A stretch of DNA of 52,431 bases from Perkinsus chesapeaki ATCC PRA-425. Its lineage: Eukaryota > Protista > Perkinsozoa. The position numbers and the translations under genes were made by a program. Below are positions 14,461 to 52,351 of the stretch, piece by piece. Numbering within the stretch: position 1 is the first letter of the stretch; each line of letters begins with the position of its first letter. The stretch lies in assembly GCA_013115145.1 (NCBI GenBank), contig JAAPAO010000210.1:1-52431 (forward strand), read 5' to 3'. The notes under the pieces are model-generated. The model saw only the letters and a list, made by a program, of their open reading frames with translations, made no database searches and had not been told where the DNA came from.

Positions 14461-14492
14461 AAGGCGCCCTGGTTCGAACCCAGGGAGGGGCA
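14461..14492 (+). pseudogene. tRNA 3'-half fragment (T-arm, acceptor 3' strand, discriminator) followed by TTTT
   Basis: cctgg-TTCGAAC-ccagg T-arm, gaggggc, A, then tttt (14493-14496). No matching 5' acceptor strand or D-arm upstream, so isotype cannot be assigned. Confidence 0.5.
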
Positions 14493-16922: not shown

Positions 16923-17644
16923 TTATATAACTCGGTCTTAAACTGCTGCAGACCACTTGTCTCTTTCTGTGCAACATTGTGGAACGGGCAGAACAAAGCT
17001 GATCGGCCTGCATTGGACTTAGAGAGAGTTTCAGCTTGTGTGGTCTCTCAGAGCAATTGCAGAGTCGCTTCGAATGCAGTAAGGTTGGTGTAGGGATAGG
17101 GCCACGATAGGTCCGCTAGAGATTTAAAATATGGTTAAAGCCCCCAGTCCTAACGAGCGGTATGCTGGACTTAGCTACACTTGCTAAAAGTTCAATTATA
17201 AACAGACAGTTGCGAGTGGCTGCACAACCAACAGGCCAATGCCAGGACAAATCCGGTCAACGCGAATCGTTTCGCTCCGCTATTCGTAACCCGCGCGCGC
17301 CCCTCAATTTTCTGCTCTTCCATTGGAGAGACACACCAACGCTTTTATCGTCCTGTAACGACTAAACTACTGTTGGGCCCTCCTAGACACTCATCTGCCC
17401 CTCTCCGGCTAATGGTAACCGCTGAGCTGTTTTGGGAAATTCTGTGACTTAAACTTTTCGCTGGGATTGCATTCTCCCGGCCATCTGGTTGAACTCAGCC
17501 AACCGATTCTATTATGGGACATGGTTGGAGAAACTATGGGCCAATTCCGAATACTGAGAATCTTGCCATAATAATAATCTCAGTAGGCGCTCATCTCTGT
17601 TATCATCCTTAGTTGGCTGCTGTTTGTAAAGTACCTTCGACAAC

Positions 17645-29570: not shown

Positions 29571-30914
29571 ATGGTTTCTACCTCGCTTCCTAGCGACATC
29601 TCTGATCGTTTGACGGAGGCTGTCGGCAAGTTCGACACTCCCAGGGAGACCATGATCAAGGTCAAGGACGACTTCCTCGAGGAGATGAAGCTTGGTTGGG
29701 AAGCCGGTCAGGGTGCTGGTGCCCCTCCAGAGGCCTCCAGTGTCAAGATGCTCACTTCTCATATTAATGTGCTTCCTCGTGGTCACGAGGCTGGCATCTA
29801 CTACGCCCTTGATCTCGGTGGAACTAATCTACGTGTTCTTCGTGTTGTTCTCAGTGCCGAGAAGAAGCCTGAGATTGCCGAGAACAGAAAGCCCATCCCC
29901 CATGACGTTATGGGTGGTACCGCCGAACAACTCTTTGGTTTCATTGCCTCTACTGCTAAGGAGCTTACCGATAAGTTCCATGATGATGACCTCATGCCTG
30001 CTGGATTCACTTTCTCCTTCCCCATGAGCCAGTCTGCTATCAACCACGGCAAGCTCATCGAGTGGACCAAGGGCTTCTCTGCCACTGGTGTCGTCGGTGA
30101 GGACCCCGCCGAGCTCCTTAACAAGGCTTTCAAGGAACAGAACGTCCCGATCTACGTGGCCGCTTTGTGCAATGATACCGTGGGTACTTTGATGACATGC
30201 TCTTACGAGTTCGAAGGTTGTGGTACCTGCAGGGTTGGTATGATTATCGGTACTGGTACCAATGCCGCCTACTCCGATCCTACCCTTGGTAACTTGGTTG
30301 TTAACACCGAGTGGGGTGGATATAACTTCAGGAACGTTCCTTCCGTTCTCAACTGCTATGATGAGGCCGTAGACAGGTCTTCCCCCAACAAGGGCAAGCA
30401 GTACTTCGAGAAGACTATCTCTGGTATGTACTTGGGTGAGCTCACTCGCCTGGCAACCCTCGATGTCCTCAAGGGTTACTCTGCTCATCTCCCCGAGTTC
30501 CTTACCAAGTCCGGTCTGGATACCAAGTACGTTTGCGCTGCCTTGGAGGGTGATAACCTTGGCTGTGATGACGAGGTTATCATGACCGTCTTCCGTCAGA
30601 TCGGCGAGGCCGTTCTTGAGCGTAGTGCCCGTCTTTGTGCCTCCGCTCTCTCGGCCGTCGCTCAGAAGTGTAACATCATGGACAGTGAAAAGCGTCACAT
30701 GCGCGAGGTGTGCATTGTTCATGGCATGCCCAGGTCTCTGACAATCGGTGTTGATGGTTCCCTTTACCAAAAGGGTTACCGCTACCCTCAGCGTTTGGAT
30801 GACGCCTTTGCCATGATTATCGGCAAGTCGGCTGCCTCCTTGGTCCATACTGTTCACAGTAGTGATGGATCTGGTGTCGGTGCTGCCCTCGTTGCCGCGG
30901 CCGTTTCCCGATAA
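29571..30914 (+). CDS. Hexokinase, copy 1 (intronless)
   Basis: LDLGGTNLR, FTFSFP, WTKGF, NDTVGT, IIGTGTNAAY, NTEWG, EKTISGMYLGE, GVDGSLY, DGSGVGAAL motifs. Confidence 0.97.
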   Translation: MVSTSLPSDISDRLTEAVGKFDTPRETMIKVKDDFLEEMKLGWEAGQGAGAPPEASSVKMLTSHINVLPRGHEAGIYYALDLGGTNLRVLRVVLSAEKKPEIAENRKPIPHDVMGGTAEQLFGFIASTAKELTDKFHDDDLMPAGFTFSFPMSQSAINHGKLIEWTKGFSATGVVGEDPAELLNKAFKEQNVPIYVAALCNDTVGTLMTCSYEFEGCGTCRVGMIIGTGTNAAYSDPTLGNLVVNTEWGGYNFRNVPSVLNCYDEAVDRSSPNKGKQYFEKTISGMYLGELTRLATLDVLKGYSAHLPEFLTKSGLDTKYVCAALEGDNLGCDDEVIMTVFRQIGEAVLERSARLCASALSAVAQKCNIMDSEKRHMREVCIVHGMPRSLTIGVDGSLYQKGYRYPQRLDDAFAMIIGKSAASLVHTVHSSDGSGVGAALVAAAVSR

Positions 30915-31660
30915 ATTATTGGTAGGCATTGCCGCTAACGTGGCAATAACCAGTACTATTGTTATTAGTAATGACTATCATTTGCTACTTTCATTTGCCA
31001 GTGAATGTTACTATATAACATAGTACTTGTTGTAATTTATCTATAGTAGTTCCATGGTAGATTCGTCAAGCCCTATATGTCGTGCCACCACCGTTTTTAG
31101 CTGTTATGATGCCGGCGATGGTAATGCCGCCTTCTGCACTTAAAGGCTCGAGGACGACGACGATTAATGCCTGACCGTTCTTGGGGTGCTCATCATCTTT
31201 ATCCTCTTCGGGCTTCATCTGTTACTCTTGTTTGTTTATAGTTATAGAGCCGTATAAGTTAAACTGCTGCTACTAACACTGCTGCGGTCGCGATAAAGCG
31301 CCTGTTATCATTGCTCGCATTCGTCGATTAATGGCTAAGGTGTTAAAGACCGCCACCGTACATTCATCTTACCTTGCAGCTTTGTGTTTAGATACATTGT
31401 GTTAATGATAGGGGAGCTGTAAGTAGTAGTAGCTGTATGTTTGGCAGGATCTATGTCATTAAGGTCGCCTTCGTGCCACTATCTGATACTTTCTTGACTG
31501 TGGTTTATTATTGATTAACTGTGTTTTCGAAGTCATTTTCGGCATAGAGAAGTCCCTCCTTTTTCATGGGCATATGAGGCATGGAAGGGTTTGCATCGTT
31601 GAGCGGTTATGACCGTCCGAGTTTCCTAGTAGTTGATAGCGCTTTCCCCTTTCGTGGTTG

Positions 31661-32998
31661 ATGACCGAATTAGATTCAGAGATATCTCAGCGCCTCGACG
31701 AAGTTCTGGACAAGTTTGACGTACCAGCCTCGACGCTAGTAGAAGTAAAGGATGACTTCCTTAGAGAGATGAGGGCAGGTTGGGAGGCTGGTAAGGGGTT
31801 TGGAGCTCCTCCCGAGGCATCCAGCATCAAGATGCTCAACGCTCATATTAACGTCCTTCCCAGAGGATACGAGAAGGGCGTCTATTACGCCTTGGACCTC
31901 GGTGGGACCTATCTGAGGGTCCTTAGAGTTGTCCTTGGCAAAGGTGAGAAGCCTGAGGTTGCCGAGCACCGGAAGCCGATACCGAAGGAAGTGATGAACA
32001 GCACCTCAGATGACCTCTTCGACTTCATAGCGATAACCGCCAAGGAGATGACCGATAAGTTCAACGATGATGGTGACATTCCAGCCGGTTTTACGTTCTC
32101 ATTTCCGATGAGTCAGGAGACGATAAATCGCGGGACTCTGGTGGAGTGGACCAAGGGCTTCAAGACCGCTGGGGTGGTGGGGGAGGATCCAGCGGTACTG
32201 CTCACCAAGGCCATGCAAAAGAGGGATGTCCCGATCTACGTGGCCGCGTTGTGCAATGATACTGTCGGCACTTTGATGACCTGTGCTTACCAATTCGAAG
32301 GTTGTGGTACCTGCAAGATTGGTATGATTATCGGTACTGGTACCAATGCTGCCTACTCCGATCCTACCCTTGGTAACTTGGTTGTTAACACCGAGTGGGG
32401 TGGATATAACTTCAGGAACGTTCGTAAGGTTCTTAATGAGTACGACACAGCAGTTGATGAGGCTTCTCCTAATCCGGGCAAACAGCTATACGAGAAGACC
32501 ATCTCGGGTATGTATCTGGGAGAGCTCACTCGCCTGGCCTCACTAGAGGTCCTCAAGGATTATCCGTCCGAGCTACCGGAGTTCCTCACCAAGGGCCCGC
32601 TGGACTCCAAGTTTGTCTGTGCCGCTCTGGAGGAGGATGGCCTGAAGTGCGAAGACCCAGTCGTGAAGGAAGTCTTCCGTACAATCGGTGACGCTGTTAT
32701 CGAACGAAGCGCCAATTTGTGCGCAGCTGGCCTGGCCGCCGTTGCAGAGAAATGTGGTATAGGCCGCGAAAACAAGCGACATATGCGAGAGGTCTGCGTC
32801 GACCACGGAATGCCGAGATGTCTCACAATAGGCGTCGATGGCTCCCTCTACCTCAAAGGGTACCACTACCCGGAGCGGCTGGCCATGGCATTTAGTAAGA
32901 TAGTTGGAGATGTGATGGCATCGCTCATTCACACTGTTCATAGTAGCGATGGTTCTGGTGTGGGAGCTGCTTTGATGGCGGCGGCGGTGTCCCAGTAG
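31661..32998 (+). CDS. Hexokinase, copy 2 (intronless tandem paralog)
   Basis: Colinear with copy 1 and has the same motifs, except LDLGGTYLR; ATG at 31661. Confidence 0.96.
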   Translation: MTELDSEISQRLDEVLDKFDVPASTLVEVKDDFLREMRAGWEAGKGFGAPPEASSIKMLNAHINVLPRGYEKGVYYALDLGGTYLRVLRVVLGKGEKPEVAEHRKPIPKEVMNSTSDDLFDFIAITAKEMTDKFNDDGDIPAGFTFSFPMSQETINRGTLVEWTKGFKTAGVVGEDPAVLLTKAMQKRDVPIYVAALCNDTVGTLMTCAYQFEGCGTCKIGMIIGTGTNAAYSDPTLGNLVVNTEWGGYNFRNVRKVLNEYDTAVDEASPNPGKQLYEKTISGMYLGELTRLASLEVLKDYPSELPEFLTKGPLDSKFVCAALEEDGLKCEDPVVKEVFRTIGDAVIERSANLCAAGLAAVAEKCGIGRENKRHMREVCVDHGMPRCLTIGVDGSLYLKGYHYPERLAMAFSKIVGDVMASLIHTVHSSDGSGVGAALMAAAVSQ

Positions 32999-33224
32999 TT
33001 ACTAGCTAGTCTAGCTTGTTGTTCAGTTTATGTAGTAATTTCTGTAGGAAGTTTTTCGCCTAATATTTGGTGCTTGGGTTCAAGTCAATAATGGTGGTAG
33101 TTTGTGAACTGTTGTTGTTAATATGGCCGATATCGATCAAGCTTTGGGGGCTACTATTGAGAGGTAGTAATCTCGGAAGGGTCATCAAGATATATAGGCG
33201 GGCGAAGGTCGTTTATGGGGTATC

Positions 33225-37280
<4,056 letters not shown>

Positions 37281-37766: not shown

Positions 37767-37788
37767 TTCGTGTGACACGAATCGTGTC
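37767..37788. repeat. Excision-type scar X[1-7]+rc(X)+X[2-8], X=TTCGTGTC (perfect)
   Basis: ttcgtgt-gacacgaa-tcgtgtc. Confidence 0.85.
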
Positions 37789-38260
37789 ACGCACATGTTT
37801 GCGAATATTCTCAATACGCGCGACAGATCTTATTTCCTATGGTTGAGCGAATCAAGTAGCACTTTTCTTCTCCATACTTTCATCGACGGTTGGCCGTGGA
37901 GAGGTGTCGCTCACAATGGAGGCACCGCTGTAGCTCTAAGAAGCTCTAAGGCGAGCTTTTGGGAATACTCCCCCACAATTTGTGTGGGGCAACTTCTCCG
38001 CTCTCAAAACCTTTATTACGAAGTATCGTGCTGCAGGGCTGACAGTTCTGAGCGAATAAGGTACAATAGAAGATAGCGAGAGTAGAGAGTTGACGAAAGT
38101 TCGAGTGGAATACGTCAGCCCGAGGTTCTATTCATCAGCACATGGGCTTGATTGGTAGCGCTGGTGGAGCAAACAGACGCAGTTACGGCAGGAATTCATG
38201 GGTATGCGTACCTTCGGCATAAAAGTTCTCTGAACTCCCTCGACTATAGTTAACATCTCA

Positions 38261-38626
38261 ATGTTTACCCTTGTCACCTTCTGCCGTCTGTTGGTTCTCG
38301 GGGCTCTGGCCAGTGCAGCTCCAAATGGAAAATACTGTGGGGGTGTCTCCTTCATATTCACGATTAGTCTAACGTTCAATGGGGACACTTTTGATCTTGA
38401 TGGGAGGTATTTCTTCAACCGCGGTTCGGCTAGAAATGTGCCCTACTCTATGCCCGCTGCTGACACTATCCAGTTTCCTCTCGACAACGCAGCACTCCAA
38501 AAGGCATTCGATGACATCAGCCCTCCAGTCTCGAGATCAGAACTGCAGTCCCTGCACTTCGCCAACGATCAGCTCACTGCAAGCACTTCCCTCGGCAGCC
38601 TGACCCTGACAAAAGGGGCATGCTGA
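38261..38626 (+). CDS. Small secreted protein, PxGKYCG...C family, copy 1 (intronless)
   Basis: Hydrophobic N-terminal signal-like segment; 101-aa mature part colinear with copies at 40689 and 46837; Cys near N-terminus and Cys as last residue. Confidence 0.85.
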   Translation: MFTLVTFCRLLVLGALASAAPNGKYCGGVSFIFTISLTFNGDTFDLDGRYFFNRGSARNVPYSMPAADTIQFPLDNAALQKAFDDISPPVSRSELQSLHFANDQLTASTSLGSLTLTKGAC

Positions 38627-39238
38627 TGAGATCAACGCCAGACCTGCCTGCGGCCGAAGACGGAGAGGCTGCAACTCATCTGAGGATAATGCCTACTCTG
38701 CTCTTTAAACTTTCTTGACATTGAAACCCTCAGAGGGATATAGAACATATGTCTGGATAAGGCCTTCATTGGCTGGGTGTACATCTGTCCTTAGGTCAGT
38801 AACTCGTTTGAAAGTCAAGTCTGCTCCAAAAGTCTATTGTAATCAAGTTTTCTGTCTAAGCCCTCGTGGATACCGGCGACTACATTGTATGCTCGCATGG
38901 CAACGGTATTTCTTACTGCGTGCTCTTAGTCCAACACAATATAGTTTGACCAGTCCTTGGGTGCTGTCATCAGTCCTATTCATGGTCTTGCTCATTGCTT
39001 GTTGTGTTCGAAGTACCGCAAAACCTGGCCTCGTCACGGATCATGACTCACGACTCATACCGTGGTTGTCTTATATCGTGAAGACTGCGAACAAACCTGG
39101 ATCCTCTCTCAACATACATAGTATGCTTGGCACACCGCATCAGTTGTCTACCCGCTATGGTACTTCCCTGATATGAAGCTGCGTCCTGACGTAGCTTTCA
39201 GGACGTGCTGGTCCTCAGACTCTGATATTCAGATCATC

Positions 39239-39708
39239 CTACTTCAAGGTTCCCGGCTGCCCCGACATTTTCGCCAAGGCCCTGACGGCGCGCATGAGAA
39301 CCTCCATTACCGTTAGCCGTAGTCTATGCTTCCCTCCTCGATGAGGAGTTGCTGTGGTCTTAAATATAACTCGGAGATATTCATTCGAGCACGGGGTAAT
39401 CCGAAGATGCAGATGAGGATCAGTAGTTCGTTCCATATACTAGGGCCCCTAGCCTAGGGGCCTTGTATGAGTCGTTGTCTACCAGAGCGAAAAATGAACC
39501 CGCTGGCAAATCAGAGCATGAGGCAGTCTCACTTAGTACTGCTAGATAGTAGAAAGAGACTGGTGAAGCAGGAATGGAGAGGTGAATATCATTCACCTGG
39601 GACACGCAGGATGCGAGCCTCCTTAGACCGACAAGGCACGACGATGGTCTGTGTCGATGAATGGGTGGATTCTGCTGCTTTCCATGTGTCGGCGGTGTGC
39701 ACACACAT
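39239..39708 (-). CDS. Small three-exon hypothetical protein
   Basis: MCVHTADTWK...ARILRVP-VLSETASCSDLPAGSFFAL-YMERTTDPHL...GTLK; frame kept across two GT-AG introns (39596-39539, 39482-39440). True start may be further upstream. Confidence 0.5.
39439..39460. repeat. Excision-type scar, X=ACTAGGGG (1 mismatch)
   Basis: actaggg-cccctagc-ctagggg (expected middle cccctagt). Confidence 0.75.
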
Positions 39709-40352
39709 TCAGCTATTTGAGGGAAACACCGCCCACTTTACACTAATGAACTAACACTTACTGCTTGCTACACGTCGGTCAATGGGGTAAACAGCCTAGT
39801 GCGTTCATCAGGCATATAAGCCCAACTCATATGAGCTAGAGGAACGGAGCATCTTCTTTGAACATCGAGCTTGAGTTCATATACAGCGAAGTTATATACA
39901 GCTTATTTTGACAATAGTAACTCCCAAAAAACCGAGCCGTGTCCGTCGTGAGTTATCAGAGCCAGTGCAGGAGATGTCATATGATCTATGATGAACACCC
40001 TTCACCTTACATCTTGCTTGTTCTTTAGCCATCGTGGCTCTTTTTTCCTATCAGTCTAGCAGCTTAGCTCTCTACTTCTTCTGCCGCTCAAGCAGGGGTC
40101 GACTCAGGAACACTGATTGAGTGAGAGGGAGGTGAAGTAGAGAATCTACACATCACAATGTAGCGAGCTTCGATGAGCTTCGAAATTTTGGTTTATCATG
40201 TACTAGAGAACGTAGCAAGGACGACTACTCGATTGTGGCTCTCGCACTGCACGTGCACCACCAGTGGAGCGCGCCCCTTCCTAATCACTCAAGCGCGGGG
40301 CCTCTCCATAGGCTGTGCGGAACTAATGAAACTTGATCAATTGTGCTTGATA

Positions 40353-40374
40353 GTCGCGTGATGCGACTCGCGTC
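40353..40374. repeat. Excision-type scar, X=GTCGCGTC (1 mismatch)
   Basis: gtcgcgt-gatgcgac-tcgcgtc (expected middle gacgcgac). Confidence 0.75.
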
Positions 40375-40688
40375 CCGGCTTTTAGTCCGGGCAGAGGGTT
40401 TTACGATCGTGAGGTTTCTTCTTATCCTTAGTTGTCTCGTCTCTCACTTGTGTTTGAGAAACCACTCTTATCATCCCCGAACTAGAAGTCTATCTTCTTT
40501 AACCAATTTTGACGTTGAGTTCGGTGGCTACACCACTGTTCATTTATGTTACATACTGAGGCGTCGGGCTCCAGTGCTTCAACTTGAATTTCGCTACCGT
40601 TTACGACCTTGCCTTCAGCATTTACTACACTCTGGCGTCTAGTGCCTAACTCGTGTTTGACAGGACGTTTGTATCGCCTATATTTACC

Positions 40689-41072
40689 ATGAGATCTGCC
40701 TCAAGCTTCATTTGCCGCCTCCTTGTTGCTATTCAAGTTGGTCTACAACTCCTAGTCCTCGGTGCACCAGACGGAAAGTACTGTGGCAAGGTAGGCGCGA
40801 TATTCAGTATCAGTCTGACCTTCCATGGTGATACTTTTGATCTCGACGCGAAGTACTTGGCATATACCGGATCGGCTCAGAACGTGCCATATTCTATGCC
40901 CCAACCCGATAAGATTAGGATACCCCTCGATAACCCGGACCTTAATAAGGCATTCGACGACCTGAAGCCACCGATCAGAAGGGCGGACTTGGAATATCTC
41001 GACTACGTCAACGACCAGATTACAGCGCATACGTCGTTGGGAAGTCTGACCTTGGCAAAGGATACGTGCTGA
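40689..41072 (+). CDS. Small secreted protein, PxGKYCG...C family, copy 2 (intronless)
   Basis: MRSASSFICRLLVAIQVGLQLLVLGA-PDGKYCG...LAKDTC; gapless alignment to copies 1 and 3. Confidence 0.85.
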   Translation: MRSASSFICRLLVAIQVGLQLLVLGAPDGKYCGKVGAIFSISLTFHGDTFDLDAKYLAYTGSAQNVPYSMPQPDKIRIPLDNPDLNKAFDDLKPPIRRADLEYLDYVNDQITAHTSLGSLTLAKDTC

Positions 41073-41234
41073 GCCAGAGCAGTGTAGTCTAAACTATGTA
41101 GATCCATACTGGCTCTCCAGCACTACTTTGACCGTCTATCATTTTGTCTATCTCACTTCTTGCAATCATTGCTGGCCAGTATGGCGGAACTCTTCGGATG
41201 GGAGTCACTGCATACTGACCCAAGCATCAGGTGG

Positions 41235-42024
41235 TCATTGAGAGTCATCTGGACCACTGAGCGAGGCGGCCTCGCCGGAGCCAGCTCTGACAAAATTGTC
41301 CTTAGTTCTCATATGTAATGAGCTTCTTGTGCCATCAGTCCTCCTCTTATCGACGAGAGTTGTCACTTGTAGTAGTAGATAAGACTGTTTTACACTCTCA
41401 GTAAGCTTTTGAGTTTCAACTTGGGTCACGCGGGACACACACTTCAAGATAAAGAAGAAGATAACCTGAGGCTCGAACATATGTAGGGAAGTCTCATCTC
41501 CATTAGAGACTCCAAAGCGTACAAGTTCATAGGCTGACTCGGGCATTCGGGTAGCAAAAGGCGGCAATGAGGAACGGGAGCCTCGAAAGTTTGACCACCC
41601 GAGGTCGAAGCGCTATTCGGTTCCGTTATCAAGCTTCTGGAACTCGCATTCTTCCCCCCCATCCTCCACCTCTGAGGCTCTATCCGAAAATTTCACTTGC
41701 GAAAGCTTGGCAGCGCCAGGTTAGAACATCAATAATCCTCGTCCTGAGGTGAAGTACACGGTGTACTGTACACCATAGTCATCTCGGCTAACAACAGACG
41801 CGAAAAGGCAGGATTTACGAAATCCCGTGATAATTTACGCGTAATGCATCCAAAATCTGCTGCAGCTGTTGTGGTGAAGTTCTTGCTGTTGACAACAACG
41901 ACTGAAGACTCGTTAGTAAAGAGTTGCAAATTTTTAATGATCTTCGATGAGCGCTCTGGTTATCTGGCATCAGAGCAACAGTTTTCTCTAGCCAGACGGC
42001 GGCAATTGTTGTGATGAGTGTCAA
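41235..42024 (-). pseudogene. Probable hypothetical gene or pseudogene (broken ORFs)
   Basis: Overlapping protein-like minus-strand ORFs (41235-41567, 41729-41929, 41815-42024); contains a perfect scar at 41753-41774. Confidence 0.3.
41753..41774. repeat. Excision-type scar, X=AGTACACC (perfect)
   Basis: agtacac-ggtgtact-gtacacc. Confidence 0.85.
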
Positions 42025-43002
42025 GTTCTCAACGAGAACTTCTCAGCGAGGAGGGTTTCAAGGCGAACCCACGACTAATATAAAGGCTATTCCGTACTTG
42101 TACAGTTTTGAGTCACTATGACAGCTCTAATTGTTGTACCTCAGTTTTGTCTTTCCACTGGAAACCTTCTAGTGTCAAATTGTCACCGACAAGTGTTATT
42201 GGCTCGTACAGTGTGGGCTGAAAACAGCGCGCCAAGACGTCACGTCATTGCTCAGTATCTCCGATAATTTCTACTACTCTCCCTGTTTGATACGGCGTCT
42301 ATTAATGAGTATGGCCTGAGGTATCTCTCACGTACCCCTGGTGCAGCGAATCGTTTTAGAGTTTCAGTCTCGTCCCGAAAAGTACATACTTATTCCGCAG
42401 TCATGGCTCAGTGTCATAATCGATGGCGGTACCCAACAAGGAAGAATAACAATCTCATTTAATCAACCAAGATCATATCAAACTTTCCGCGCTGTTCAGT
42501 TCGTGATTGGAGCCCGTGCTTTCTTAGCTCGGACAGGACTTTATGTGCCCGTAAACTCGTGGCTGGAACTCTCGATTCCTACCTGGCGCTAGATATTCGC
42601 TCCACCATTAGGACAGCAGCGTAGAATATGGGCGCATTCTTCACACGAGCGTTGCGAAAATAACCTTCGCGAAAAATTCGTGAAAGTTTCCCGTTGAGAC
42701 GAAGGTGTATTGTTCTAGAAAGTTCGTCAGGGGCATATGGCACAGTAGTGACGCCGCTGCCAGTCCGGGAAAGACAGCTTGTGACCGGTATTATTAGCAC
42801 CTTCGGTAAACGATGTCCGACTCCGGCTACACCAATGCTTTATACGAAGTATTACTTAGCGGACAGGCGATTCGGCCTTTAGTTACTATAGCCTCGGAGA
42901 CCTTGTAAGCTCGAAGAACCTAAGCTCACGCCAACGGCGAAGGCACGAGATTCCTGCGAACCTACACTTTGTACCTCGTGTGACACAAACTCAACGCACG
43001 CA

Positions 43003-43024
43003 TGTGCGCGGCGCACAGTTCGCC
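43003..43024. repeat. Excision-type scar, X=TGTGCGCC (1 mismatch)
   Basis: tgtgcgc-ggcgcaca-gttcgcc (expected last part gtgcgcc). Confidence 0.7.
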
Positions 43025-43483
43025 CAATCGATCCGGGCAAAGGGCTCCACCCTTGCGACCTATAGGGGCTATGTTGTAGCCTGAACAAATTGAATAATAT
43101 AGCAGGCATTAAGCTACAGTCGCCAGCCGAAGGTATTCAGGATCCTCCTGCCACAAGTTCTCCACTTTTCAGACCCTTCCGATGATACTTTCCTCAATTT
43201 TGGTTTTACTCATCTGCGGAGTCAATATCTCTATGGTTCACGGCATATGTGACGATAGAGTGAAGCATGACTCCGGCTACTTACATGGCGGTTCAGATGC
43301 TTTGTAAACCTGCCTCCGAGATCGTAGCCGCGTATTACTTTTTTTGTCCTCAGGTTGTTCTATTGGTTCTTTGAATCGCGCACAGACCCTGCTACGAGCC
43401 CCACCCTTATTTACTTCCAGGGAGGCCCTGGAGCCAGCAGTATGTATTCACTCACTGCGGGCAATGGCGGACCATGTGTACTT

Positions 43484-43505
43484 GATCGGGTCCCGATCAT
43501 CGGGA
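43484..43505. repeat. Excision-type scar, X=GATCGGGA (perfect), in coding exon
   Basis: gatcggg-tcccgatc-atcggga. Confidence 0.92.
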
Positions 43506-44713
43506 TGGTAAGGATACGTCGGTAAACAGGTAAGCGGCCCCGAATTATTCCAGCTCATTTTTTGATGTACGTCTAATTATAAGGTATTCGTTCAATACCT
43601 TTGCCAATGTTTTGTACATCGACCAACCCGCTTCGACAGGCTTCAGCAAAGGAACAACTCCGAAGGATTCAGTCGCGGCGGCGAAAACCACGTAAGTAGT
43701 TCATTTGCTTTCAGCTGCCGATGATTCCCTCACAGTCTCCAGGCGTTGAAGAGTTTCTTCTACAAATACCCAAATTACAATAGACAAGTATTCTTTATCG
43801 GCGAGTCATATGCAGGTGGGTATCACGGTCCACTTTCTGACGTTCTCCCTTGGGCTCGAGGATCTTTGGCAGGACATTACATCCCACCCCTGGCGCAGCT
43901 CACCATTGCGAGTACGCCCTCTATCAAGCTGAAGGGTGTCATTCTCGGTAATGCTCTAGTCAACCCTAAGCTCCAGTAAGTATTATGTGTTCCATGCATA
44001 ACTCCAGCGTCAAATCATATTACTACCCAGGTATCGATCAATGCCCATGATGGCTTTTAAAAGTGGCACGGCCCCCAGCGTCATTACAGAGAAAGAGTAA
44101 CGAAAACATTCAGAGGCGCGGCTTCACTGCCGTTCATGTTCTTAGGTACCGGCGTATGCTCGATGCCGTACATACAGTCCTTTCCGAAATGCAACTTTGT
44201 CTCGATAATCGGGAGAGCGAAGAACTGTGCCAAAAAGCATCTGATGACATTTTCAAATACTTGAGAGACCCCATCAGAGATAAGGACATCGATCCGTATG
44301 TTACACGAGATTATTCACAATGCGGTGCGCAAATATAATAGTTTTTCAGGTTCACGGTTCGCTCAGTTTGTGATAGAGTTATGAATTGCCTGTTGCAGGT
44401 ACGACCTTCGCCTCAAGTGTACCGAGCCAGCTCCTGGATGTGAATATACGAAGAATGTGAGTTGGGCAACATACTTAGGTTTCGTATCTTTCATGGGTAA
44501 TCGATGCCATGAAATTTCAAATTTCATGCATTGTACGAGCGCTATAGTCTTCGTTTTCAGTTCGACACCTACTTCAATAGCCGGAAGGTTCAAGATTATC
44601 TCAAAGTCAATAAAAAATGGACGCTTTTCGACGTTCAGGTGAGCCGTTGTTGTTCCACTGCGACCGTACTCATAGATTCACAAGTGCGAGCTCATCAGGG
44701 GCGCCTAGTTTGT

Positions 44714-44770
44714 GGCTACTTTGTAAGGTTATCAGCGCCTAGTAGGCCACGATAACCCCACAAAGTAGCC
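44714..44770. repeat. Decayed 57-bp odd-centred palindrome in an intron
   Basis: ggctactttgt/acaaagtagcc (11 bp), ggttatc/gataacc (7 bp), gccta-g-taggc at the centre. Confidence 0.75.
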
Positions 44771-45608
44771 TTCCGTACATTTCCTGTTTCTTAGGTTTTT
44801 AATTCCTTCCTTGGTGACTTGCCCGTTGACTACAGCCCGGATTTGTCGACGGTCCTAGATACAGGTTTACGGGTAAGTCGTCGGGCGGTACACTGTCGTC
44901 ACGACACACTATACACCTGTATACGGCATGTATCAAGGGAGTGAGAAGCATTGTTTGAATCTATACAGTGAGGACTGTGTCGCATAGTCGACGATACTTC
45001 GAAAGGATTTGGTTGGAAGGCTTTCATTTGGCAGGTCATGATATACGCCGGAGACCAAGACTATCTCTGCAACTGGATAGGAAATCGTAACATGGCTCTG
45101 AGCATTCAGTGGAGTGGTCAAGATGGATTTGTCAAGGCTAAAGATGTGCCATATCGTGTAAGAGACGCTATTGCTTTAAGGCGCTAAATGGGAGTGATAT
45201 GTTCGCAACAAATAATTGAGACATCGCGATGATGTCATTATCATAATGGATCGGTGTGCAATGACAAGTATACTAGCGGCGAGCAGCGCAACCGAACGTG
45301 TCACCGAGAGCGCCTTTCAAACGCGCAACTTCCCTTAGCTGCCAACCGGAGAGCAAGTTGGAATATTTAGAAGTTTCACTTCCCCGAGTACAGGAGGGCA
45401 ACTCAACTTTGCTCAGGTAGGTTGTGTTCTGTGCATACAGTCATTCTCAACTCAGATTTACAAAGCCGGTCATAGCGCTGCAAAAGATTCCCCAGCGGCG
45501 GTTCTCAAGCTCCTATCAGAGTTTGTAGCCGACCGACTAAACTGAAGCCGGGCTTTAGCTCCTAGGCAACGATGACATTCTGAACCTTTCAGGGGTTATG
45601 ATTGGATT

Positions 45609-46292
45609 TTACGAACATGTGAGAAGCTTTACCGTCGATTCGGGAACTCCTGCCGCTAGGGCGCGCTCAGCAACGAGAGTTTTTCGTACGTCTCTCATAC
45701 TTCTTATGAGTTGTGTTTCCAGAAAGTCTGCTAATGCCTTGTCCACGCCTAGTTCCCGTGATACGCACGATAGCTTAGGCAGAGAACCCAGGCAATGTTG
45801 ACGACGCCGTTGCTACGGATCCGGGATCCTGTTCTACTCATCCTTTGCGTCCAATATGTAGCTGCATGGGAAGGTGGCCAGTAGTCAACGGGGAATCCCG
45901 GGGTCCCGGGGTGACGAGGCGGCCTCGTCGAGGCCATCGAGGCACATCACCGTAGCAGGCCACCTCCTAAAGCTGATGGGAGATGACCTTCGCGGTTCTC
46001 CCCAGGAATCGTCCACTGCTCGTTCTCGATTGCTTTCATGCCTTTCGTATTTTGTTCGGTGCAGCCTCTGTTAAGATAAAATGTCTCAAATGCAACGATT
46101 CTCGTGTGGTTTTGTGCTCCATAGAGACCCACCCCGCCGCAAGCAGGAAACATCAGACCAAATTGCGGCTACTCGGTGATTGAGAAGACGCTGTTCAGTC
46201 TCGATGTTTTCAGTACGAGGGTGTCCAGGTTTATCGCGATATAACAGATCTTCGAGAACTTTATTCATAAGGCCAATAAAGGGCGCCCTCAA
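45609..46292 (-). CDS. Probable multi-exon hypothetical protein
   Basis: Protein-like segments KVLEDLLYRDKPGHPRTENIETEQRLLNHRVAAIWSD and terminal LSCVSRELGVDKALADFLETQLIRSMRDVRKTLVAERALAAGVPESTVKLLTCS-stop; exon model incomplete. Confidence 0.35.
45914..45935. repeat. Excision-type scar pattern, X=ACGAGGCC (perfect)
   Basis: acgaggc-ggcctcgt-cgaggcc; could alternatively arise from codons GLDEAAS on the minus strand. Confidence 0.65.
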
Positions 46293-46836
46293 AGTTCTAA
46301 CTTTCGCGTGCAGTTGTTCAGATCAAACGATTAATGTCCAACCAGCACAACTGTTTAGGATATCACAAAGATAACCTTACTCACCTCCATATACTGGCAA
46401 GGGCTCACCAAAATGATACTAGAGATCAAATTAGTCCGAACGAATAGTCTATTCTAACGAGTACACCTATACATGAGTAGCTCAACTCAGTAGATTGAAC
46501 TCTGCAACAGCTCTCGATATTTTTCACCGCATAACTCTGCACACACGAATCCTCCACCCGCGCAAACGAGATTAGAAAGTGAAACATCAGCGGATTTAAA
46601 AGTCATAAACAGATGAGTTACTAACCTTCTCTACAGGGATATCAAGGCTCAAGGCATCCACTTGAGCATGAAATAATCAGAGCATAAAACAGAAGAAAGA
46701 TTTGACGAGAGACAACTACTCGATGTCTACCATTGCTCCATTCGCATACTCACCGCCACCAAACTGACGAAGCCTATGGGAAGCCGAGGGTTGCCGATTT
46801 GCAAGGTTTTTTGTCGTTGACACCTTCACCTTTCTT

Positions 46837-47205
46837 ATGTCCGCTATGTTCAGCTTAATCTGCCGGCTGTTGGTTCTTGGGGTTCTAGCCTATTCTGACC
46901 CGAATGGAAAATATTGTGGGGGCGTCGGCTCGCTCTTCCAGATTAGTGTGGATATTCGTGGCAGAACTTTCGACCTCAACGCGAGGTTTCTCTCGAATTC
47001 TGCATCTGCTCGCAACGTGCCCTTCACTATGCCTAGTCCGGATACTATCCGACTTCCTCTCGATAACAGTGCGCTGAATAAGGCATTTGATGACCTCAAG
47101 GCTCCCATCCAGAAGGAAGATTTGCAGACCCTACACTTTGCCAACGATGAGATCACGGCTACCACTCCTGTAGGTAGCATTAGCTTGACAAAAGACCAAT
47201 GTTAA
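46837..47205 (+). CDS. Small secreted protein, PxGKYCG...C family, copy 3 (intronless)
   Basis: MSAMFSLICRLLVLGVLAYSD-PNGKYCG...LTKDQC; 59/101 identical to copy 1 in the mature part (hand count). Confidence 0.85.
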   Translation: MSAMFSLICRLLVLGVLAYSDPNGKYCGGVGSLFQISVDIRGRTFDLNARFLSNSASARNVPFTMPSPDTIRLPLDNSALNKAFDDLKAPIQKEDLQTLHFANDEITATTPVGSISLTKDQC

Positions 47206-48842
47206 GAACAGGGATATGACGGCTGCGAGATATGAGGCTATATGACGGTCTAGTCTAGTCTAGTCTCACGGTCTCATGGTACGCCGGTGCTGAGGGTTGT
47301 GAACATTGTGAGCAAGTTGCCCGGAGCAATGCTTTTGTAGTCTCTTGAAGAGACCAACGCTAACCGGTCGTCTACCTGTCTAAATCCCTTCAACGTCGCC
47401 AGCTCCATCCTAGGCCCACATGACAATATACTTGTAGACTTGTTAGTGGTAAGTCTACGAATGACGAGCTGCCGTCCTATGCTCTTGTTCGAACACAACT
47501 CCATCTAATCGTCGAGTTTCATTAGTTCTTAGCCGATCCTTGTCAAGTGACTGTTGGGTTTGAAGTGTCACGATCCCTCTGCATCGCGCTAAGCGTTGCT
47601 GACCCGCAAAATGACAGTTTTTCCCTTCATTCATTCATTTTATACCACGTTTATTGCTCTGGAGATGCGACGACCGCAGCAACCCCGATGAGTCATTGCC
47701 AACTATAAGGACAATTGTTGAAAAGCATGAATCGGGTGGATACGAAGAATGCAAAGAATGACCAGAACGTCTATTGTTTCATGGTTATCTGCCTGTCTTA
47801 CCTCAGTTGCTTCGTCCTCTGCTGACATGACGGAATGTTTGTGGACTCCACAAACATTTCGGGTTTGTGGAGTTCTCCACAATATGGAGATGCCATCGGG
47901 TGCTCGTACTATAACACAACGCTGTCCAACCGTCTCATTCGGACGATGCTAATCTGGGTCTCGTTAAGTGAGTGTTGGATTCGAAGCATTAGAGGAAATA
48001 GCGACTTCTCCATAACCCCCAACATGGCTGACTTCTATAAGAATGAAAGTTATCCCATCCTGTGAGATCGGACCTGCCGCGCTTTCCACGATAAACGGAG
48101 TATAATGAGGGGCTCAGTTGTGTCCGAAGGGCCGTCTGAGTAAGCCACGTGCCAACAGTGCGGCATTGTTAATGCTTCTCGGTGCGAGCTCCCGAACGTG
48201 CGCGGCGTCGTTATGCAGGGCTCCCTGCTCCGTCTAAAACTTCAGAATAGGCTGTAAGGCGTCCGCGCGCGAAGGGATACGGTCCCTCGCTAGAGCTGAG
48301 TGAATAGCGCAGATAAGAGAAGCTACTTGTCGAATTTGAAAATCACCGGTAATTCTTCTTCACACTCTGCACCGTAGAAACTATTGTGTGGGGAGGATGC
48401 TGTCAAAAATTCCAGCCCCAGGTAGCTCGTGGACGATTTACAACTTGCGCAGCGAGAGCGCTAATATCTGTGTCTCCCGCGTCGATCGTAACTTGTATAC
48501 GAGATTCTGGACAAACTCGAAGGGCTCGAGATCCTCCTTCAACAGCGAGGCGTATCTCATCCACCTATATAGTTAGCCTGTTCGACGCCAATATCTGGAA
48601 ACTGACTGGAGTGGCGCTCACCACAGATCCCCAGGTGCACTCTACTGCCGGGCAGTTTATATGTGTAATTAGCTCCGGACTCGAGTCTGGAGAATCAAAG
48701 AGGGCAGAAACGAGTGAGTAGTATCTCGTGAGTTTCGGGCTTCTGGGCACCCACTCTAACTTATACTGAGCTTGACTCTGTAACTGCTGATGAACACAGG
48801 TCTCCAAAGCAAAGACGAAACCTGCTCTTAACTTTATGGAGC

Positions 48843-48864
48843 ACAGCGGCCCGCTGTCAGCGGG
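48843..48864. repeat. Excision-type scar, X=ACAGCGGG (perfect)
   Basis: acagcgg-cccgctgt-cagcggg. Confidence 0.85.
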
Positions 48865-48962
48865 AGATACCGCCTTAGCTATGCACAACGCTAAGCGTGA
48901 AAGGCGCACAATTGCGCTGTCTACTATAAGTATCTAGCTAGGGCACTACAGCAGATTTGTGA

Positions 48963-48984
48963 TACATATAATATGTAACATATT
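48963..48984. repeat. Excision-type scar, X=TACATATT (perfect)
   Basis: tacatat-aatatgta-acatatt. Confidence 0.8.
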
Positions 48985-49464: not shown

Positions 49465-50100
49465 CGCGTTATATAAAACGCCGGTTTAATACACATAACG
49501 CATAATACAACGCGGGTTGTCGCTAAATAGCGCACATAACGCGATAAACGCAAAATTCGTTTTACTCACGCACGCTAAAACGCGTAGCTATACCTGGTGT
49601 AGTCCCCACAATAACACCTGAAGTGGTCCACTTCAGGTGTTATTGTGGGGACTCGCGTACGTGCCGACCTGAACTTGACAAACTCCACTAGTCGAACTCG
49701 AGGTTGTTTGGGCAACCCAACAATAAGTTTCGTGAAATGCTGAAACTACTGGTCGCTATCCGACTAGAGCTTCTAACTGGCTGCCCGTAAAGAAAATGGA
49801 AATTAGCTAGAATACGACATCAAGAAAGGTCTGGGAGCTCGATTCCCCCTTCAACGGCATTACCGATGTCAAAGAAGTTGATAGTTTCGGGATTTTCCTG
49901 GGGTCCCTTGTAGTACTATTGCCGCCGTTCCAGGTTAGTTCTAGTAGTACTCTACTGCTAAGTTTGTATCTATATACAACGCGTTATATCGCGCTAAACT
50001 CGTATGCGTTGTGAGAAACGCGTTTTACTCACGCCTTAACGTGTAAAACGTATTATAACGCGTTATGATGGAGGTATGAAAGACATTATTGCGTTTTACG
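49465..50100. mobile_element. Probable non-autonomous DNA element with AACGC/GCGTT-rich subterminal arrays
   Basis: Dense AACGC motifs at ~49465-49590 and GCGTT/AACGCGTT motifs at ~49975-50100 flank a non-coding core; cgttttactcacgc occurs in both arrays (49558, 50021). No clean TIR or TSD found. Confidence 0.45.
49601..49653. repeat. Perfect 53-bp palindrome (26-bp arms, 1-nt centre)
   Basis: agtccccacaataacacctgaagtgg-t-ccacttcaggtgttattgtggggact. Confidence 0.97.
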
Positions 50101-50254: not shown

Positions 50255-52283
50255 TCTGCTGCTGTTGTTGTTGTTTTTTCTCAACAGCGGCATGCAGAAT
50301 ACAAGTATACAGAACTGGCCCTCGCGGGCAGATATACTAAGCCCTCGCGGGCAGATATACTAAGCCCTTGCGGGCATACGAAAAAGCCCTTGCGGGCAAA
50401 CCAAATTACAGAAGGCCCCGACGAGCATCAAGATGCTGCATCATGGCCTCGAAGAGTCGATTGAAGGCCTTGCGGCGCTTCAAATCGACGACCATTTTAT
50501 AAAAGTGATAGGGGACACCACCCTTAACGCGCTTCCTGACATGCTCTAAGAGCGGGCAGGAGCGCAGGAGGTGCCTTAGGTTCCCTATCGGGGCTCCGCA
50601 ATCACACTCCGGAGAGTCGATTACCCCACATCTGTGAAGATGAGCTGGGGTTGGAGCCCTACAGAACACTACAGCACTAACTGCTGGGGTAACTTCCCCA
50701 CGACTCCACAGCCTCGCATGCGAGGCACAGTAGAAGAAGTCGTTGCAGGCAGTGCCAAGACCAGCCCGTTTCTCTGACCACCAGTCACTTGCGTAGTGAC
50801 AGAAGCCCGGCTTCGGCTTGATACCGCCGAAGGGTCCTCACACTGATTTCTGTCTCCGAGGAGACTTCCGTCATGGAGGCACCCTTGGCTGCCAGTTCAT
50901 CAGCTCGGTCGTTGGCAGGCATGCCGCTGTGACCAGGTACCCAATGAAAGGTGACCTTGTCCGGGAGTCCAGCCAAGAGCAGAGTAATCTGCCTGGCTTT
51001 ATCCCGCCGAGCTACCGTAGATCTAGACGACAAGATCTTGAGTACCGCCTGAGAGTCCATGAAGACTTCCCAGCTTTCCTCTTGATCTGCCGCCGAGACG
51101 ACCCAGCGGACTGCTTCGAGAACTCCAAGGAGTTCACAGTCCGTAATAGTAGCGTAAGGGGAGAGCTTCCAGCAACTAGCGTGGAGCTCTACTCCCTTAC
51201 GATAAACCACCATGCCAGCACGCCTTGCGGTCTTTGACCACCGAGCCATCAGTAAAGATGGCATTTCCGGTTAGGAGAGCCGCCTGCGCGTAGCGCTTGG
51301 CTTCCTCCTTTGGCCGGATGGTTGTCTTGACCGAGGGCTCCCACGGAGGAGTGGGTAAGCCCCGCCAGCACTGGACTTTGTCCAGACTACCATGGCCCTC
51401 AGAGAGGACCAGGCCTTTGACCGCAAGACATTGGTCTAGGGCCCTCGCACAGCCAAGTGCGGACAGCCTTGCGGCTGCGGTAGTCTTCAGCTCTAAGTCT
51501 GCTGGCAGTAAGCCAGCCGCGACACAGAGTGCCGCGTTAGAGCTGTTCCTTGGAGCCTGGAGGGCTATCCTCGCAACCATGGCTGTGACCTGCAGCATTA
51601 CAGACTTCGCCGTGGCGGATTCAAGCCCTTCCTTCCAGGCTACTACTGCGTGAGCAAGGGCGGGTTGGATCGCCACCTTATAGGTTTTGATTATCTTCCT
51701 ACCAGTGATCCCTGCTCGCGCCCAACCAAGGTGCCTCAGCCGGCCAAGTTTGGCCTTGGCTTCGGACACCTTTAACCGAATATGGTGCTGGAAAGACAGA
51801 CGATGGTCAATCCAGACACCAAGAACCCGAACGACTTTGACAATGTCGACGGGTACACCATCAAGGGACAAGACATGGTCCCCGATGGTCCTAGGCAGGA
51901 GCGCCTGGCTTTTGGCCGGCTCATAGGACACTACCGCTTCGGCAGCCCAGGCCAGCAGCAGAGCCTCTGCTGACCGCCACCGTTCAACCAAAGACGGGCC
52001 TGTGCCACCCGATACCATTACCGTCGTGTCATCCGCATAGAGGGTCAGGCTCACGCCTTTCTCCTCCATACCTGCGAACTCATCCACGAGCGGTAGGGTG
52101 CTCAAGAGGAACAGGAAAGGGCCCAGAGCACTGCCCTGGGGGACGCCCCTTTCCAGCTCTAGGCTGGCACCGTCAGAACCATAGACAGCCGAAACACCCT
52201 AGGCTCTTAAATAGCTCTCTACAATGTCCACAACGTACCGTGGAACATTGTATCGGGCCAGAGTTGCCAGGATGTGGCTGTGT
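50255..52283 (-). mobile_element. 5'-truncated, degraded non-LTR retrotransposon (RT, RNase H, C-terminal CCHC finger)
   Basis: RT motifs GVPQGSALGP and LYADD; RNase H residues FTDGS, DCELLG, FMDSQ, WVPGHSG...NDRAD; CDCG...HLLRSC. In-frame TAG at 52199-52201; frameshifts near 51230 and ~50800; (AAC)n/(CAG)n tail-like run near 50255-50280. Confidence 0.93.
50318..50397 (-). repeat. Four tandem 22-23-nt units in the retroelement 3' UTR, each a GCCC-GNRA-GGGC hairpin
   Basis: Sense strand of element: gcccGCAAgggc x2 and gcccGCGAgggc x2, starting 9 nt after the stop codon. Confidence 0.9.
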
Positions 52284-52351
52284 TTTAATAAACGGTAAAC
52301 GAGGTTTGCCGAAGTAAAACGAGGGGGCTCCGCTTCGCCCTGTGCACGCGT

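What the first reader, a model, noticed from the sequence alone, without database searches (positions are those of the whole stretch)
37767..48984. A recurring 22-nt scar grammar X[1-7] + rc(X) + X[2-8]: repeated hAT-type insertion and excision with stereotyped repair
Seen: the same architecture with nine different 8-mers. Perfect at 37767, 41753, 43484, 45914, 48843, 48963; one mismatch at 39439, 40353, 43003; two-mismatch candidates at 41261 and 45228. A perfect instance fixes 14 bases, so about 52431/4^14 = 2e-4 are expected per window under uniform composition. Established: hAT transposases (Ac, Tam3, Hermes) make 8-bp TSDs and leave hairpins on the flanking DNA, and opening these gives inverted duplications centred on the complement of the base next to the element. 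Inference: both hairpins opened at the outer TSD edge expose complementary inverted-TSD overhangs that anneal, always giving a net +14-nt scar. Near-uniform outcomes imply one dominant microhomology-driven repair route, and about one event per 1.2 kb implies a strong local hotspot. Because 14 is not a multiple of 3, every coding hit is a knockout. I saw no such scar in 1-37.3 kb (eye scan). I do not know of this described as a genome-wide signature in perkinsids.
Basis: partly seen in the sequence, partly recalled or inferred. Interest (0 to 1): 0.92.

Follow-up and report, generated by a model that had tools for sequence, protein, structure and literature searches.

The report
Stereotyped 22-base transposon excision scars
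This oyster/clam-parasite genome (Perkinsus chesapeaki, and also P. olseni) is littered with identical-format 22-base scars, each adding exactly 14 bases, which fit the mark left when a hAT-type jumping gene leaves its site; they record heavy past transposon traffic and can break genes.

Summary
Six perfect and at least five near-perfect X[1-7]+rc(X)+X[2-8] motifs lie in 37.7-49 kb, against about 0 expected. Among all unit lengths of 7-12 and all end offsets tested, only length 8 with a one-base offset at both ends occurs.

- **Not an artefact.** Read-derived contigs from two samples carry the scars unchanged.
- **True +14-nt insertions.** Three intact paralogues of the S10 carboxypeptidase have a single X where the window has the 43484 scar. 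Two P. olseni genomes differ by exact 14-nt presence/absence at five sites. Two retroelement copies show the same.
- **Not local.** Four P. chesapeaki contigs (109 kb) hold 19 perfect scars and P. olseni loci (87 kb) hold 19. P. marinus looks poorer. The scan had already noted the same scar on many other pieces of this genome.
- **Two hairpinned ends.** Variants that keep two inverted copies (X[1-7] rc(X) filler rc(X) X[2-8]) show this.

Best reading (0.8): footprints of an 8-bp-duplicating, flank-hairpin-forming (hAT-type) transposon. The hairpins are opened far from the tip and joined by annealing of the inverted duplications.

Not shown by me: a hAT transposase or a filled allele. I found no published description.

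The parts
37767..37788 (.). Perfect scar, X=TTCGTGTC
39439..39460 (.). Scar with 1 mismatch, X about ACTAGGGG
40353..40374 (.). Scar with one substitution in the middle copy, X=GTCGCGTC. It lies in a multi-copy repeat, and a paralogous copy in read contigs reads ...GATAG|TCGCGTC..., i.e. a single X
41261..41282 (.). Degraded scar (2 mismatches), X about GCGAGGCC
41753..41774 (.). Perfect scar, X=AGTACACC
43003..43024 (.). Scar with 1 mismatch, X=TGTGCGCC, upstream of the S10 gene
43484..43505 (.). Perfect scar, X=GATCGGGA, inside an exon of the S10 carboxypeptidase. It is an exact 14-nt insertion relative to three intact paralogues and shifts the frame from +2 to +1
43194..45539 (+). S10 serine carboxypeptidase gene (part of annotated FOL47_003565) with about 8 short GT..AG introns. 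It is frame-broken by the 43484 scar. Its introns hold the 45228 scar and the 44508 palindrome
44508..44528 (.). Lone palindrome with a one-base centre and 10-nt arms, in an S10 intron. Candidate one-sided hairpin footprint
45228..45249 (.). Degraded scar (2 mismatches) in S10 intron 45155-45338
45914..45935 (.). Perfect scar, X=ACGAGGCC
47834..47893 (.). Complex footprint: X[1-7]+rc(X)+5 flank-derived palindromic bases (12-nt arms, one-base centre), then a second X / rc(X) / X[2-8]-like set. X=TTGTGGAG
48843..48864 (.). Perfect scar, X=ACAGCGGG
48963..48984 (.). Perfect scar, X=TACATATT
49601..49653 (.). Perfect 53-bp palindrome with 26-nt arms and a one-base centre. Candidate hairpin opened 26 nt from its tip
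41081..42193 (.). Cluster of five 3-mismatch candidates (41081, 41902, 42025, 42151, 42172), likely older decayed scars
   Evidence: 13 three-mismatch hits in the window against 2.2 expected, some of them offset-7 self-overlaps of true scars

Best explanation
The 22-nt motifs are germline excision footprints of a cut-and-paste transposon that makes 8-bp target-site duplications and leaves hairpins on the flanking DNA. This is the chemistry known for hAT elements.

1. Insertion duplicates an 8-mer X, giving X-element-X.
2. At excision the transposase nicks one base inside each flank. The flank's 3'-OH attacks the opposite strand, so each flank ends in a hairpin whose tip is the complement of the base that touched the element.
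3. The host opens both hairpins at least 8 nt from the tip and they unfold. This gives 3' tails ending in rc(X) on the left end and, on the other strand, X on the right end.
4. The tails anneal over exactly 8 nt. Flaps are trimmed, gaps filled and nicks sealed, giving X[1-7]+rc(X)+X[2-8], a net gain of 14 nt.

Shown here:
- the fixed 8/1 geometry;
- that scars are exact +14 insertions over a single X;
- that they are polymorphic between P. olseni genomes;
- that rarer products keep both inverted copies;
- that one scar breaks a gene.

Inferred: the hAT identity of the element, the way the hairpins are opened, and the annealing step.
For: **Geometry**
- P. chesapeaki: 19 perfect scars in 109 kb on 4 contigs, only at k=8 with offsets 1/1. 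Every other k>=7 or offset pair gives 0.
- P. olseni: 19 perfect in 87 kb from 3 assemblies, with the same exclusivity.
- Expected per 100 kb is about 4e-4.
- Odd-centred palindromes are enriched (23 against 3.45 expected); even-centred ones are not.

**Insertion over a single X**
- The S10 exon at 43484 has exactly 14 extra bases against three intact paralogues. The protein alignment is collinear across the scar, with the frame shifted by 2.
- The L003/L004 alignment has exact 14-nt presence/absence at L003 6695 and 4430 and at L004 8940, 6856 and 6294. One scar is shared.
- Retroelement copy L008 has two 14-nt insertions (10812, 11004) that are absent from L009 and from the window's copy.

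**Two hairpinned copies of X before repair**
- X[1-7] rc(X) filler rc(X) X[2-8] occurs at L004 6027 (filler ACC, the reverse complement of the left flank), L011 8082 (filler AA), L011 6373, L011 7231 and L008 11410. In L011 6373 and L008 11410 the filler ends match the reverse complement of the flank.

**Not an artefact**
- Logan contigs of two samples from two studies span 40431/40811-46000 with 0-1 differences and no indels.

**Literature**
- hAT (Ac/Ds) footprints are palindromic insertions centred on the complement of the base next to the element. Arms reach 20 nt in yeast, and microhomology is used in joining (PMC5873905; PMC1978519).
- The MULE Muta1 makes an even 43+43 hairpin (PMC5499845), which would give offset 0. 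No offset-0 motif is seen.

**Leads only**
- Unchecked scan notes report hAT transposases elsewhere in this genome.
Against: - I saw no hAT transposase and no element with inverted termini and an 8-bp duplication in about 220 kb of fetched Perkinsus DNA.
- No orthologous filled allele (X-element-X) was found.
- The 37 reconstructed targets show no hAT-like nTnnnnAn consensus; information content is at most 0.09 bit.
- Classical short hAT footprints (1-3 palindromic bases) are not enriched.
- No empty allele was seen for the window's own scars in read contigs, though contigs drop rare variants.
- Merlin relics, which also make 8-9 bp duplications, are reported in P. marinus (PMC8101967).
Confidence: 0.8

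Rival explanations
1. The scars are excision footprints, but of a non-hAT superfamily with 8-bp duplications (Merlin, an 8-bp MULE, P, Zisupton or an undescribed family) that happens to form flank hairpins with a one-base offset.
For: Merlin-related ORFs and remnants are reported in P. marinus, and Merlin makes 8-9 bp duplications. MULEs form flank hairpins and can have 8-9 bp duplications. I did not see a hAT element myself. No hAT-type target consensus was found.
Against: The one-base-offset hairpin, with the palindrome centred on the complement of the adjacent base, is documented only for hAT. The Muta1 hairpin is even, 43+43, which predicts offset 0, and none is seen. MULE and Merlin duplications vary between 8 and 10 bp, yet no k=9 or k=10 motif occurs. 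Unchecked scan notes report hAT transposases in this genome.
Confidence: 0.1
2. The scars come from transposon-independent mutation: replication template switching, or snap-back synthesis (for example by polymerase theta) at random breaks, creating forward-inverted-forward triplications.
For: Template-switch and snap-back events are known to create short inverted duplications (my own knowledge, not tested here). No element was seen at any site.
Against: Such processes give variable lengths, whereas 38 perfect events in two species all have unit 8 and offset 1. Products that hold two separate inverted copies, each attached to its own forward copy and extended by reverse-complemented flank, require X to have been duplicated on two separate hairpinned ends before joining. 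A single break in unduplicated DNA cannot provide that.
Confidence: 0.05
3. The scars are a sequencing, library or assembly artefact.
For: Palindromic artefacts are known from some library preparations (my own knowledge).
Against: The same scars appear in read-derived contigs of two samples from two studies, at single-copy depth and without alternative forms. They are present in four assemblies of two species, with one orthologous scar shared and others private. Decay by point mutation (1-3 mismatches) and avoidance of the gene-dense 1-37 kb are not artefact behaviour.
Confidence: 0.01

Closest known systems
hAT (Ac/Ds, Tam3, Hermes) excision footprints: the flank-hairpin / P-nucleotide model (Coen 1986; Zhou 2004; PMC5873905, PMC1978519)
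   Same: The unit is 8 bp, as for the hAT duplication. The palindromic insertion is centred on the complement of the base that adjoined the element. Joining uses microhomology. Long palindrome arms occur, as in S. cerevisiae.
   Different: One product dominates among the recognisable footprints: the whole duplication is inverted and shared by both ends (+14 nt). The short, heterogeneous 1-3 nt footprints of plants and Candida are not seen. The scars are fixed in the germline at up to several per kb of intergenic DNA across a genus, rather than seen in reporter assays. No target consensus was found.
V(D)J coding-joint P nucleotides (RAG) and Transib
   Same: Hairpins form on the DNA that stays behind, are opened off-centre and give palindromic additions.
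   Different: RAG and Transib hairpins are even (no unpaired centre base) and Transib duplicates 5 bp. The scars need an odd centre and 8 bp.
MULE (Muta1) excision
   Same: Flank hairpins; 8-10 bp duplications.
   Different: The Muta1 hairpin is 43+43, i.e. even, and most Muta1 excisions are repaired precisely (PMC5499845). Offset-0 and k=9/10 motifs are absent here.
Precise repair of mPing excision sites through microhomology derived from the target-site duplication (title of PMC4561436, listed; the paper itself was not read)
   Same: The duplication made at insertion supplies the homology used to rejoin the donor site.
   Different: There the forward copies pair and the site is restored. Here the inverted, hairpin-derived copies pair and 14 nt are added.

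Membership tests
hAT-superfamily excision footprint | The repeated unit equals the 8-bp target-site duplication | tested here: met
   Only k=8 gives perfect motifs among k=7-12, in the window, in 109 kb of P. chesapeaki and in 87 kb of P. olseni.
hAT-superfamily excision footprint | The palindrome is centred on the complement of the base adjoining the element (the nick lies one base inside the flank, giving an odd-centred hairpin) | tested here: met
   Offsets 1/1 only; all other offset pairs for k=8 give 0. One-base-centred palindromes number 23 against 3.45 expected, even-centred 5 against 3.05. The rule as stated in PMC5873905.
hAT-superfamily excision footprint | The ancestral or empty allele has a single copy of X | tested here: met
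   Exact 14-nt gaps in paralogues or orthologues: 43484; five P. olseni sites; two retroelement sites; 40353, from a loose end.
hAT-superfamily excision footprint | A filled allele X-element-X with hAT termini at the same site in another haplotype or strain | tested here: inconclusive
   None was seen in the 15.5-kb L003/L004 alignment. TSD+TIR scans gave no hit in the window and only chance-level hits in the other loci. The sample is far too small.
hAT-superfamily excision footprint | hAT transposase genes present in the genome | not tested
   No ER.FS C-terminal motif in the six-frame translations that contained it as a hAT domain, and no hAT Pfam family among the called genes of the fetched loci. 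Only unchecked scan notes report hAT transposases elsewhere in this genome.
hAT-superfamily excision footprint | Target preference such as nTnnnnAn (Ac/Hermes-type families; not universal) | tested here: not met
   37 reconstructed targets, symmetrised, give at most 0.09 bit at any position.
MULE / Transib / RAG-type footprint (even hairpin) | Palindrome without an unpaired centre base (offset 0); duplication of 9-10 bp or 5 bp | tested here: not met
   k=8 with offset 0 gives 0. k=9, 10 and 5 with any offset show no enrichment. Muta1 hairpin is 43+43.
Template-switch / snap-back inverted duplication | Variable unit length; a single pre-existing copy of the duplicated segment | tested here: not met
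   The length is fixed. Five products hold two inverted copies, each tied to its own forward copy.

The most novel reading that the evidence does not exclude
Perkinsus olseni and P. chesapeaki carry, or recently carried, a very mobile hAT family. Its excisions are repaired by one unusual route: hairpins opened far from the tip, then annealing of the inverted target duplications. The resulting fixed-format +14-nt scar would then be a major class of medium-sized indel. About a third of indels of 5 nt or more between two P. olseni genomes in one 15.5-kb alignment are of this kind. The scars would give a genome-wide, datable record of every excision and a recurrent source of gene knockouts and promoter change near secreted-protein genes. 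The adjacent 'double' scar (L009 7448/7463, and possibly L010 6301-6332) further allows that old scars are preferred re-insertion targets.
Probability: 0.55. Interest if true: 0.8.

Novelty: new variant of a known kind. Interest (0 to 1): 0.74.

Why it matters
Excision footprints are usually studied a few at a time in reporter assays, and they are heterogeneous. Here a whole genus carries thousands (by extrapolation) of footprints of a single exact format.

- Each scar reveals its original 8-bp target, its age (through decay) and the repair route used.
- This gives a direct read-out of hairpin opening and microhomology-type end joining in a protist lineage where DNA repair is almost unstudied.
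- It supplies markers that differ between parasite isolates.
- It is a mutational source that demonstrably breaks genes: the S10 carboxypeptidase here, and retroelement ORFs in P. olseni.
- It misleads automatic annotation. The gene model at this locus is read through the scar in the wrong frame.

Tried and rejected
- **Classical short hAT footprints.** X[1-7]+1 base+X[2-8], and the general forms with p+q<8 palindromic bases, are not enriched. The gap-1 class gives 10 hits inside against 13 outside the scar-rich region, and the centre-base rule is no better than chance.
- **'Variant scar' at 50424.** Rejected: the P. olseni retroelement copy has the same length there, so it is native sequence.
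- **Apparent identity of scar 40353 with P. olseni L003 20058.** The flanks are unrelated, so this is coincidence.
- **Filled sites.** Scans for an 8-bp duplication plus inverted termini gave nothing in the window and three weak hits in the other loci against about 0.7 expected.
- **hAT transposase.** A search for the ER.FS C-terminal motif in six-frame translations of the fetched DNA gave one spurious hit.
- **High-copy ~100-nt repeat at 40368-40480 as a candidate MITE.** It has a CAGAGGG-like start but no matching duplication and no further copies in the fetched loci.
- **Exact-protein look-ups.** The window's own small proteins and hexokinase are not on record.
- **RNA.** No RNA run holds this stretch, so expression or RNA-level removal could not be examined.
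- **Rfam.** No match in the window.
- **Literature.** Searches found no description of this scar in Perkinsus or elsewhere. Yu et al. 2004 could not be read.


Full report
**1. The observation**

The perfect motifs X[1-7]+rc(X)+X[2-8] start at 37767, 41753, 43484, 45914, 48843 and 48963. Sites 39439 and 43003 have one mismatch. Sites 40353, 41261 and 45228 have two by my count; at 40353 this is a single substitution in the middle copy.

Shuffles in 1-kb blocks give 0, 0.03, 0.17 and 2.2 hits for 0-3 mismatches. The window has 6, 2, 4 and 13; some of the 3-mismatch hits are offset-7 self-overlaps of true scars. All hits with at most 2 mismatches lie in 37.7-49.7 kb, and further 3-mismatch candidates cluster at 41.1-42.2 kb.

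I scanned unit lengths 5-12 with 0, 1 or 2 bases dropped at each end. For k>=7, perfect motifs occur only at k=8 with one base dropped on both sides. Palindromes with a single unpaired centre base and arms of at least 7 number 23 against 3.45 expected. Even-centred ones are at expectation. Besides the triple motifs there are lone odd-centred palindromes with 10-, 12- and 26-nt arms at 44508, 47834 and 49601.

**2. Source and setting**

The window is the whole contig JAAPAO010000210.1 of assembly GCA_013115145.1, Perkinsus chesapeaki.

- Positions 1-37 kb are gene-dense: a CLC channel, two tandem hexokinases and an MCM gene.
- The scar-rich 37.7-50 kb has no stop-free segment of 200 aa or more. 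It holds three small paralogous ORFs, an S10 serine carboxypeptidase gene with short GT..AG introns and a retroelement at the end.
- The hexokinase-hexokinase-MCM order is kept in P. olseni, and hexokinase-MCM in P. marinus. Synteny ends just past MCM, where the scars begin in both P. chesapeaki and P. olseni.
- About 40% of 1-37.5 kb, notably 10-17.5 kb, lacks long stop-free segments yet has no scar. Coding constraint alone therefore does not explain the clustering.

**3. Not an artefact**

Logan contigs built from reads of two samples in two studies span 40431/40811-46000 with 0-1 base differences and no insertion or deletion. They thus carry the scars at 41261, 41753, 43003, 43484, 45228 and 45914. 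No empty allele was seen, but contigs drop rare variants.

**4. Scars are exact +14-nt insertions over a single X**

- (a) At 43484 the intact paralogue P0123 aligns up to residue 84 in frame +2, ending at 43489. It resumes at residue 83 in frame +1 from 43498. Both copies of X encode the same two residues. A DNA alignment of this exon with three intact P. chesapeaki paralogues (L002, L010, L011) shows one gap of exactly 14 nt in all three, with a single X-like 8-mer in its place. I saw no other frame-breaking lesion in the aligned exons. The remaining interruptions are GT..AG introns.
- (b) At 40353 a paralogous copy of the surrounding multi-copy repeat joins ...GATAG directly to TCGCGTC..., i.e. 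a single X.
- (c) Orthologous 15.5-kb stretches of two P. olseni assemblies (L003 and L004, 93% identical) differ by exact 14-nt presence/absence at L003 6695 and 4430 and at L004 8940, 6856 and 6294. The other genome holds a single X each time. One scar (L003 7447 = L004 7412) is shared. Seven of the 23 indels of 5 nt or more in that alignment are scars or scar variants.
- (d) In a P. olseni retroelement copy (L008) the perfect scars at 10812 and 11004 are 14-nt insertions. They are absent from another P. olseni copy (L009) and from the P. chesapeaki copy in the window.

**5. The signature is genome-wide and genus-level**

- Four P. chesapeaki contigs (109 kb) hold 19 perfect scars, all with k=8 and offsets 1/1. 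No motif has any other geometry with k>=7.
- Five P. olseni loci from three assemblies (87 kb) hold 19, with the same exclusivity.
- Scars pile up in long intergenic stretches. L011 5876-9200 has 17 hits with at most 2 mismatches in 3.3 kb.
- A 21-kb P. marinus locus has no perfect scar. It has one 1-mismatch hit and one variant, which suggests a lower load there on a small sample.
- The scan's index lists 114 notes with the word 'scar' for this genome, several describing the same 22-nt format on other pieces. The scan therefore found this before on other DNA of the same genome. Those notes are unchecked.

**6. Mechanism**

*Hairpin geometry.* The fixed unit of 8 and the one-base offset are what hAT chemistry predicts. 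The element is flanked by an 8-bp duplication. The first nick lies one base inside the flank. The flank therefore ends in a hairpin whose tip is the complement of the base that touched the element. This rule is stated for Ac/Ds footprints in PMC5873905 and PMC1978519. By contrast the MULE Muta1 hairpin is 43+43, i.e. even (PMC5499845). RAG- and Transib-type hairpins are also even (my own knowledge). These predict offset 0, which never occurs here.

*Joining.* If both hairpins are opened at least 8 nt from the tip and unfold, the two 3' tails end in rc(X) and, on the other strand, X. They can pair over exactly 8 nt. Trimming and fill-in then give the 22-nt product.

*Direct support for two hairpinned ends.* Five products have the form X[1-7] rc(X) filler rc(X) X[2-8]:
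- L004 6027, where the filler ACC is the reverse complement of the left flank and L003 has a single X;
- L011 8082, with filler AA;
- L011 6373, L011 7231 and L008 11410, where in 6373 and 11410 the filler ends match reverse-complemented flank.

Together with the lone 10-26-nt-arm palindromes, they show that opening occurs well away from the tip and not at a fixed place. The uniformity therefore stems from the 8-nt pairing.

*Ascertainment caveat.* Short palindromic footprints of the plant type are not enriched. Precise repair and deletions would be invisible, so 'near-uniform' holds only among recognisable products.

**7. What is not shown**

- I found no hAT transposase, no element with inverted termini plus an 8-bp duplication, and no filled allele in about 220 kb of Perkinsus DNA.
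- The 37 reconstructed targets have no consensus.
- hAT transposases in this genome are reported only by unchecked scan notes.
- Merlin relics, which make 8-9 bp duplications, are published for P. marinus (PMC8101967). This keeps a non-hAT element as a minor rival.
- Transposon-independent template switching is very unlikely, given the fixed length and the products with two inverted copies.

**8. Novelty**

The hairpin / P-nucleotide model is textbook. Three things appear new:
- a single full-duplication-inverted product (+14 nt) as the dominant recognisable footprint;
- its density and spread across at least two Perkinsus species, with polymorphism between isolates;
- its role as a gene-breaking mutation.

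Eight full-text searches found no description of it. Yu et al. 2004, the most relevant yeast study, could not be read, so a similar product in yeast assays cannot be excluded.

**9. Verdict**

Confidence is 0.8 for hAT-type excision footprints joined by annealing of inverted duplications. Class: new variant of a known kind. Interest: 0.74.

Noticed in passing
window 43233-47202 (protein P0121 = FOL47_003565): The public gene model at this locus is chimeric. It follows the S10 exons, continues in the wrong frame after the 43484 scar, and ends with the C-terminal 88 residues of the separate small-protein gene at 46939-47202.
   Followed up: partly
window 40368-40480: A repeat of about 100 nt with 10-20 times single-copy depth in read contigs. 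Many diverged copies break off at 40385 and at 40449-40503. It starts with a CAGAGGG-like motif, but no duplication or clear inverted termini were found.
   Followed up: partly
window 48783-48831; L003 20730-20777 (minus strand): A 49-nt stretch 94% identical between P. chesapeaki and P. olseni, in otherwise unalignable intergenic DNA, 12 nt upstream of the 48843 scar. No Rfam match.
   Followed up: partly
window 38234-38623, 40650-41069, 46768-47202 (+): Three paralogous small ORFs (about 120-140 aa, N-terminal hydrophobic stretch, conserved NGKYCG motif) interspersed among the scars. All three are still open.
   Followed up: no
window 29571-37186; L003, L004, L005: The tandem hexokinase pair followed by MCM is conserved in P. 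olseni, and a single hexokinase plus MCM in P. marinus. Synteny ends right after MCM, where scar-rich, lineage-specific DNA starts.
   Followed up: partly
window 50407-52285 (-): A non-LTR-type RT/RNase H retroelement relic, 75-77% identical in DNA and 82% in protein to P. olseni copies. The family is shared by both species.
   Followed up: partly
L009 7448-7484 (P. olseni): A double scar. The third segment of one scar is the first segment of the next, so two events used targets shifted by one base. A similar pile-up may lie at L010 6301-6353. This may mean re-insertion into old scars.
   Followed up: no
window 10000-17500: About 7 kb with almost no long stop-free segments and lower G+C (0.45), yet not a single scar, unlike the ORF-poor 37.7-50 kb.
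   Followed up: no
window 7342-7417: A tandem duplication of a 38-nt A+T-rich unit, 95% identical.
   Followed up: no
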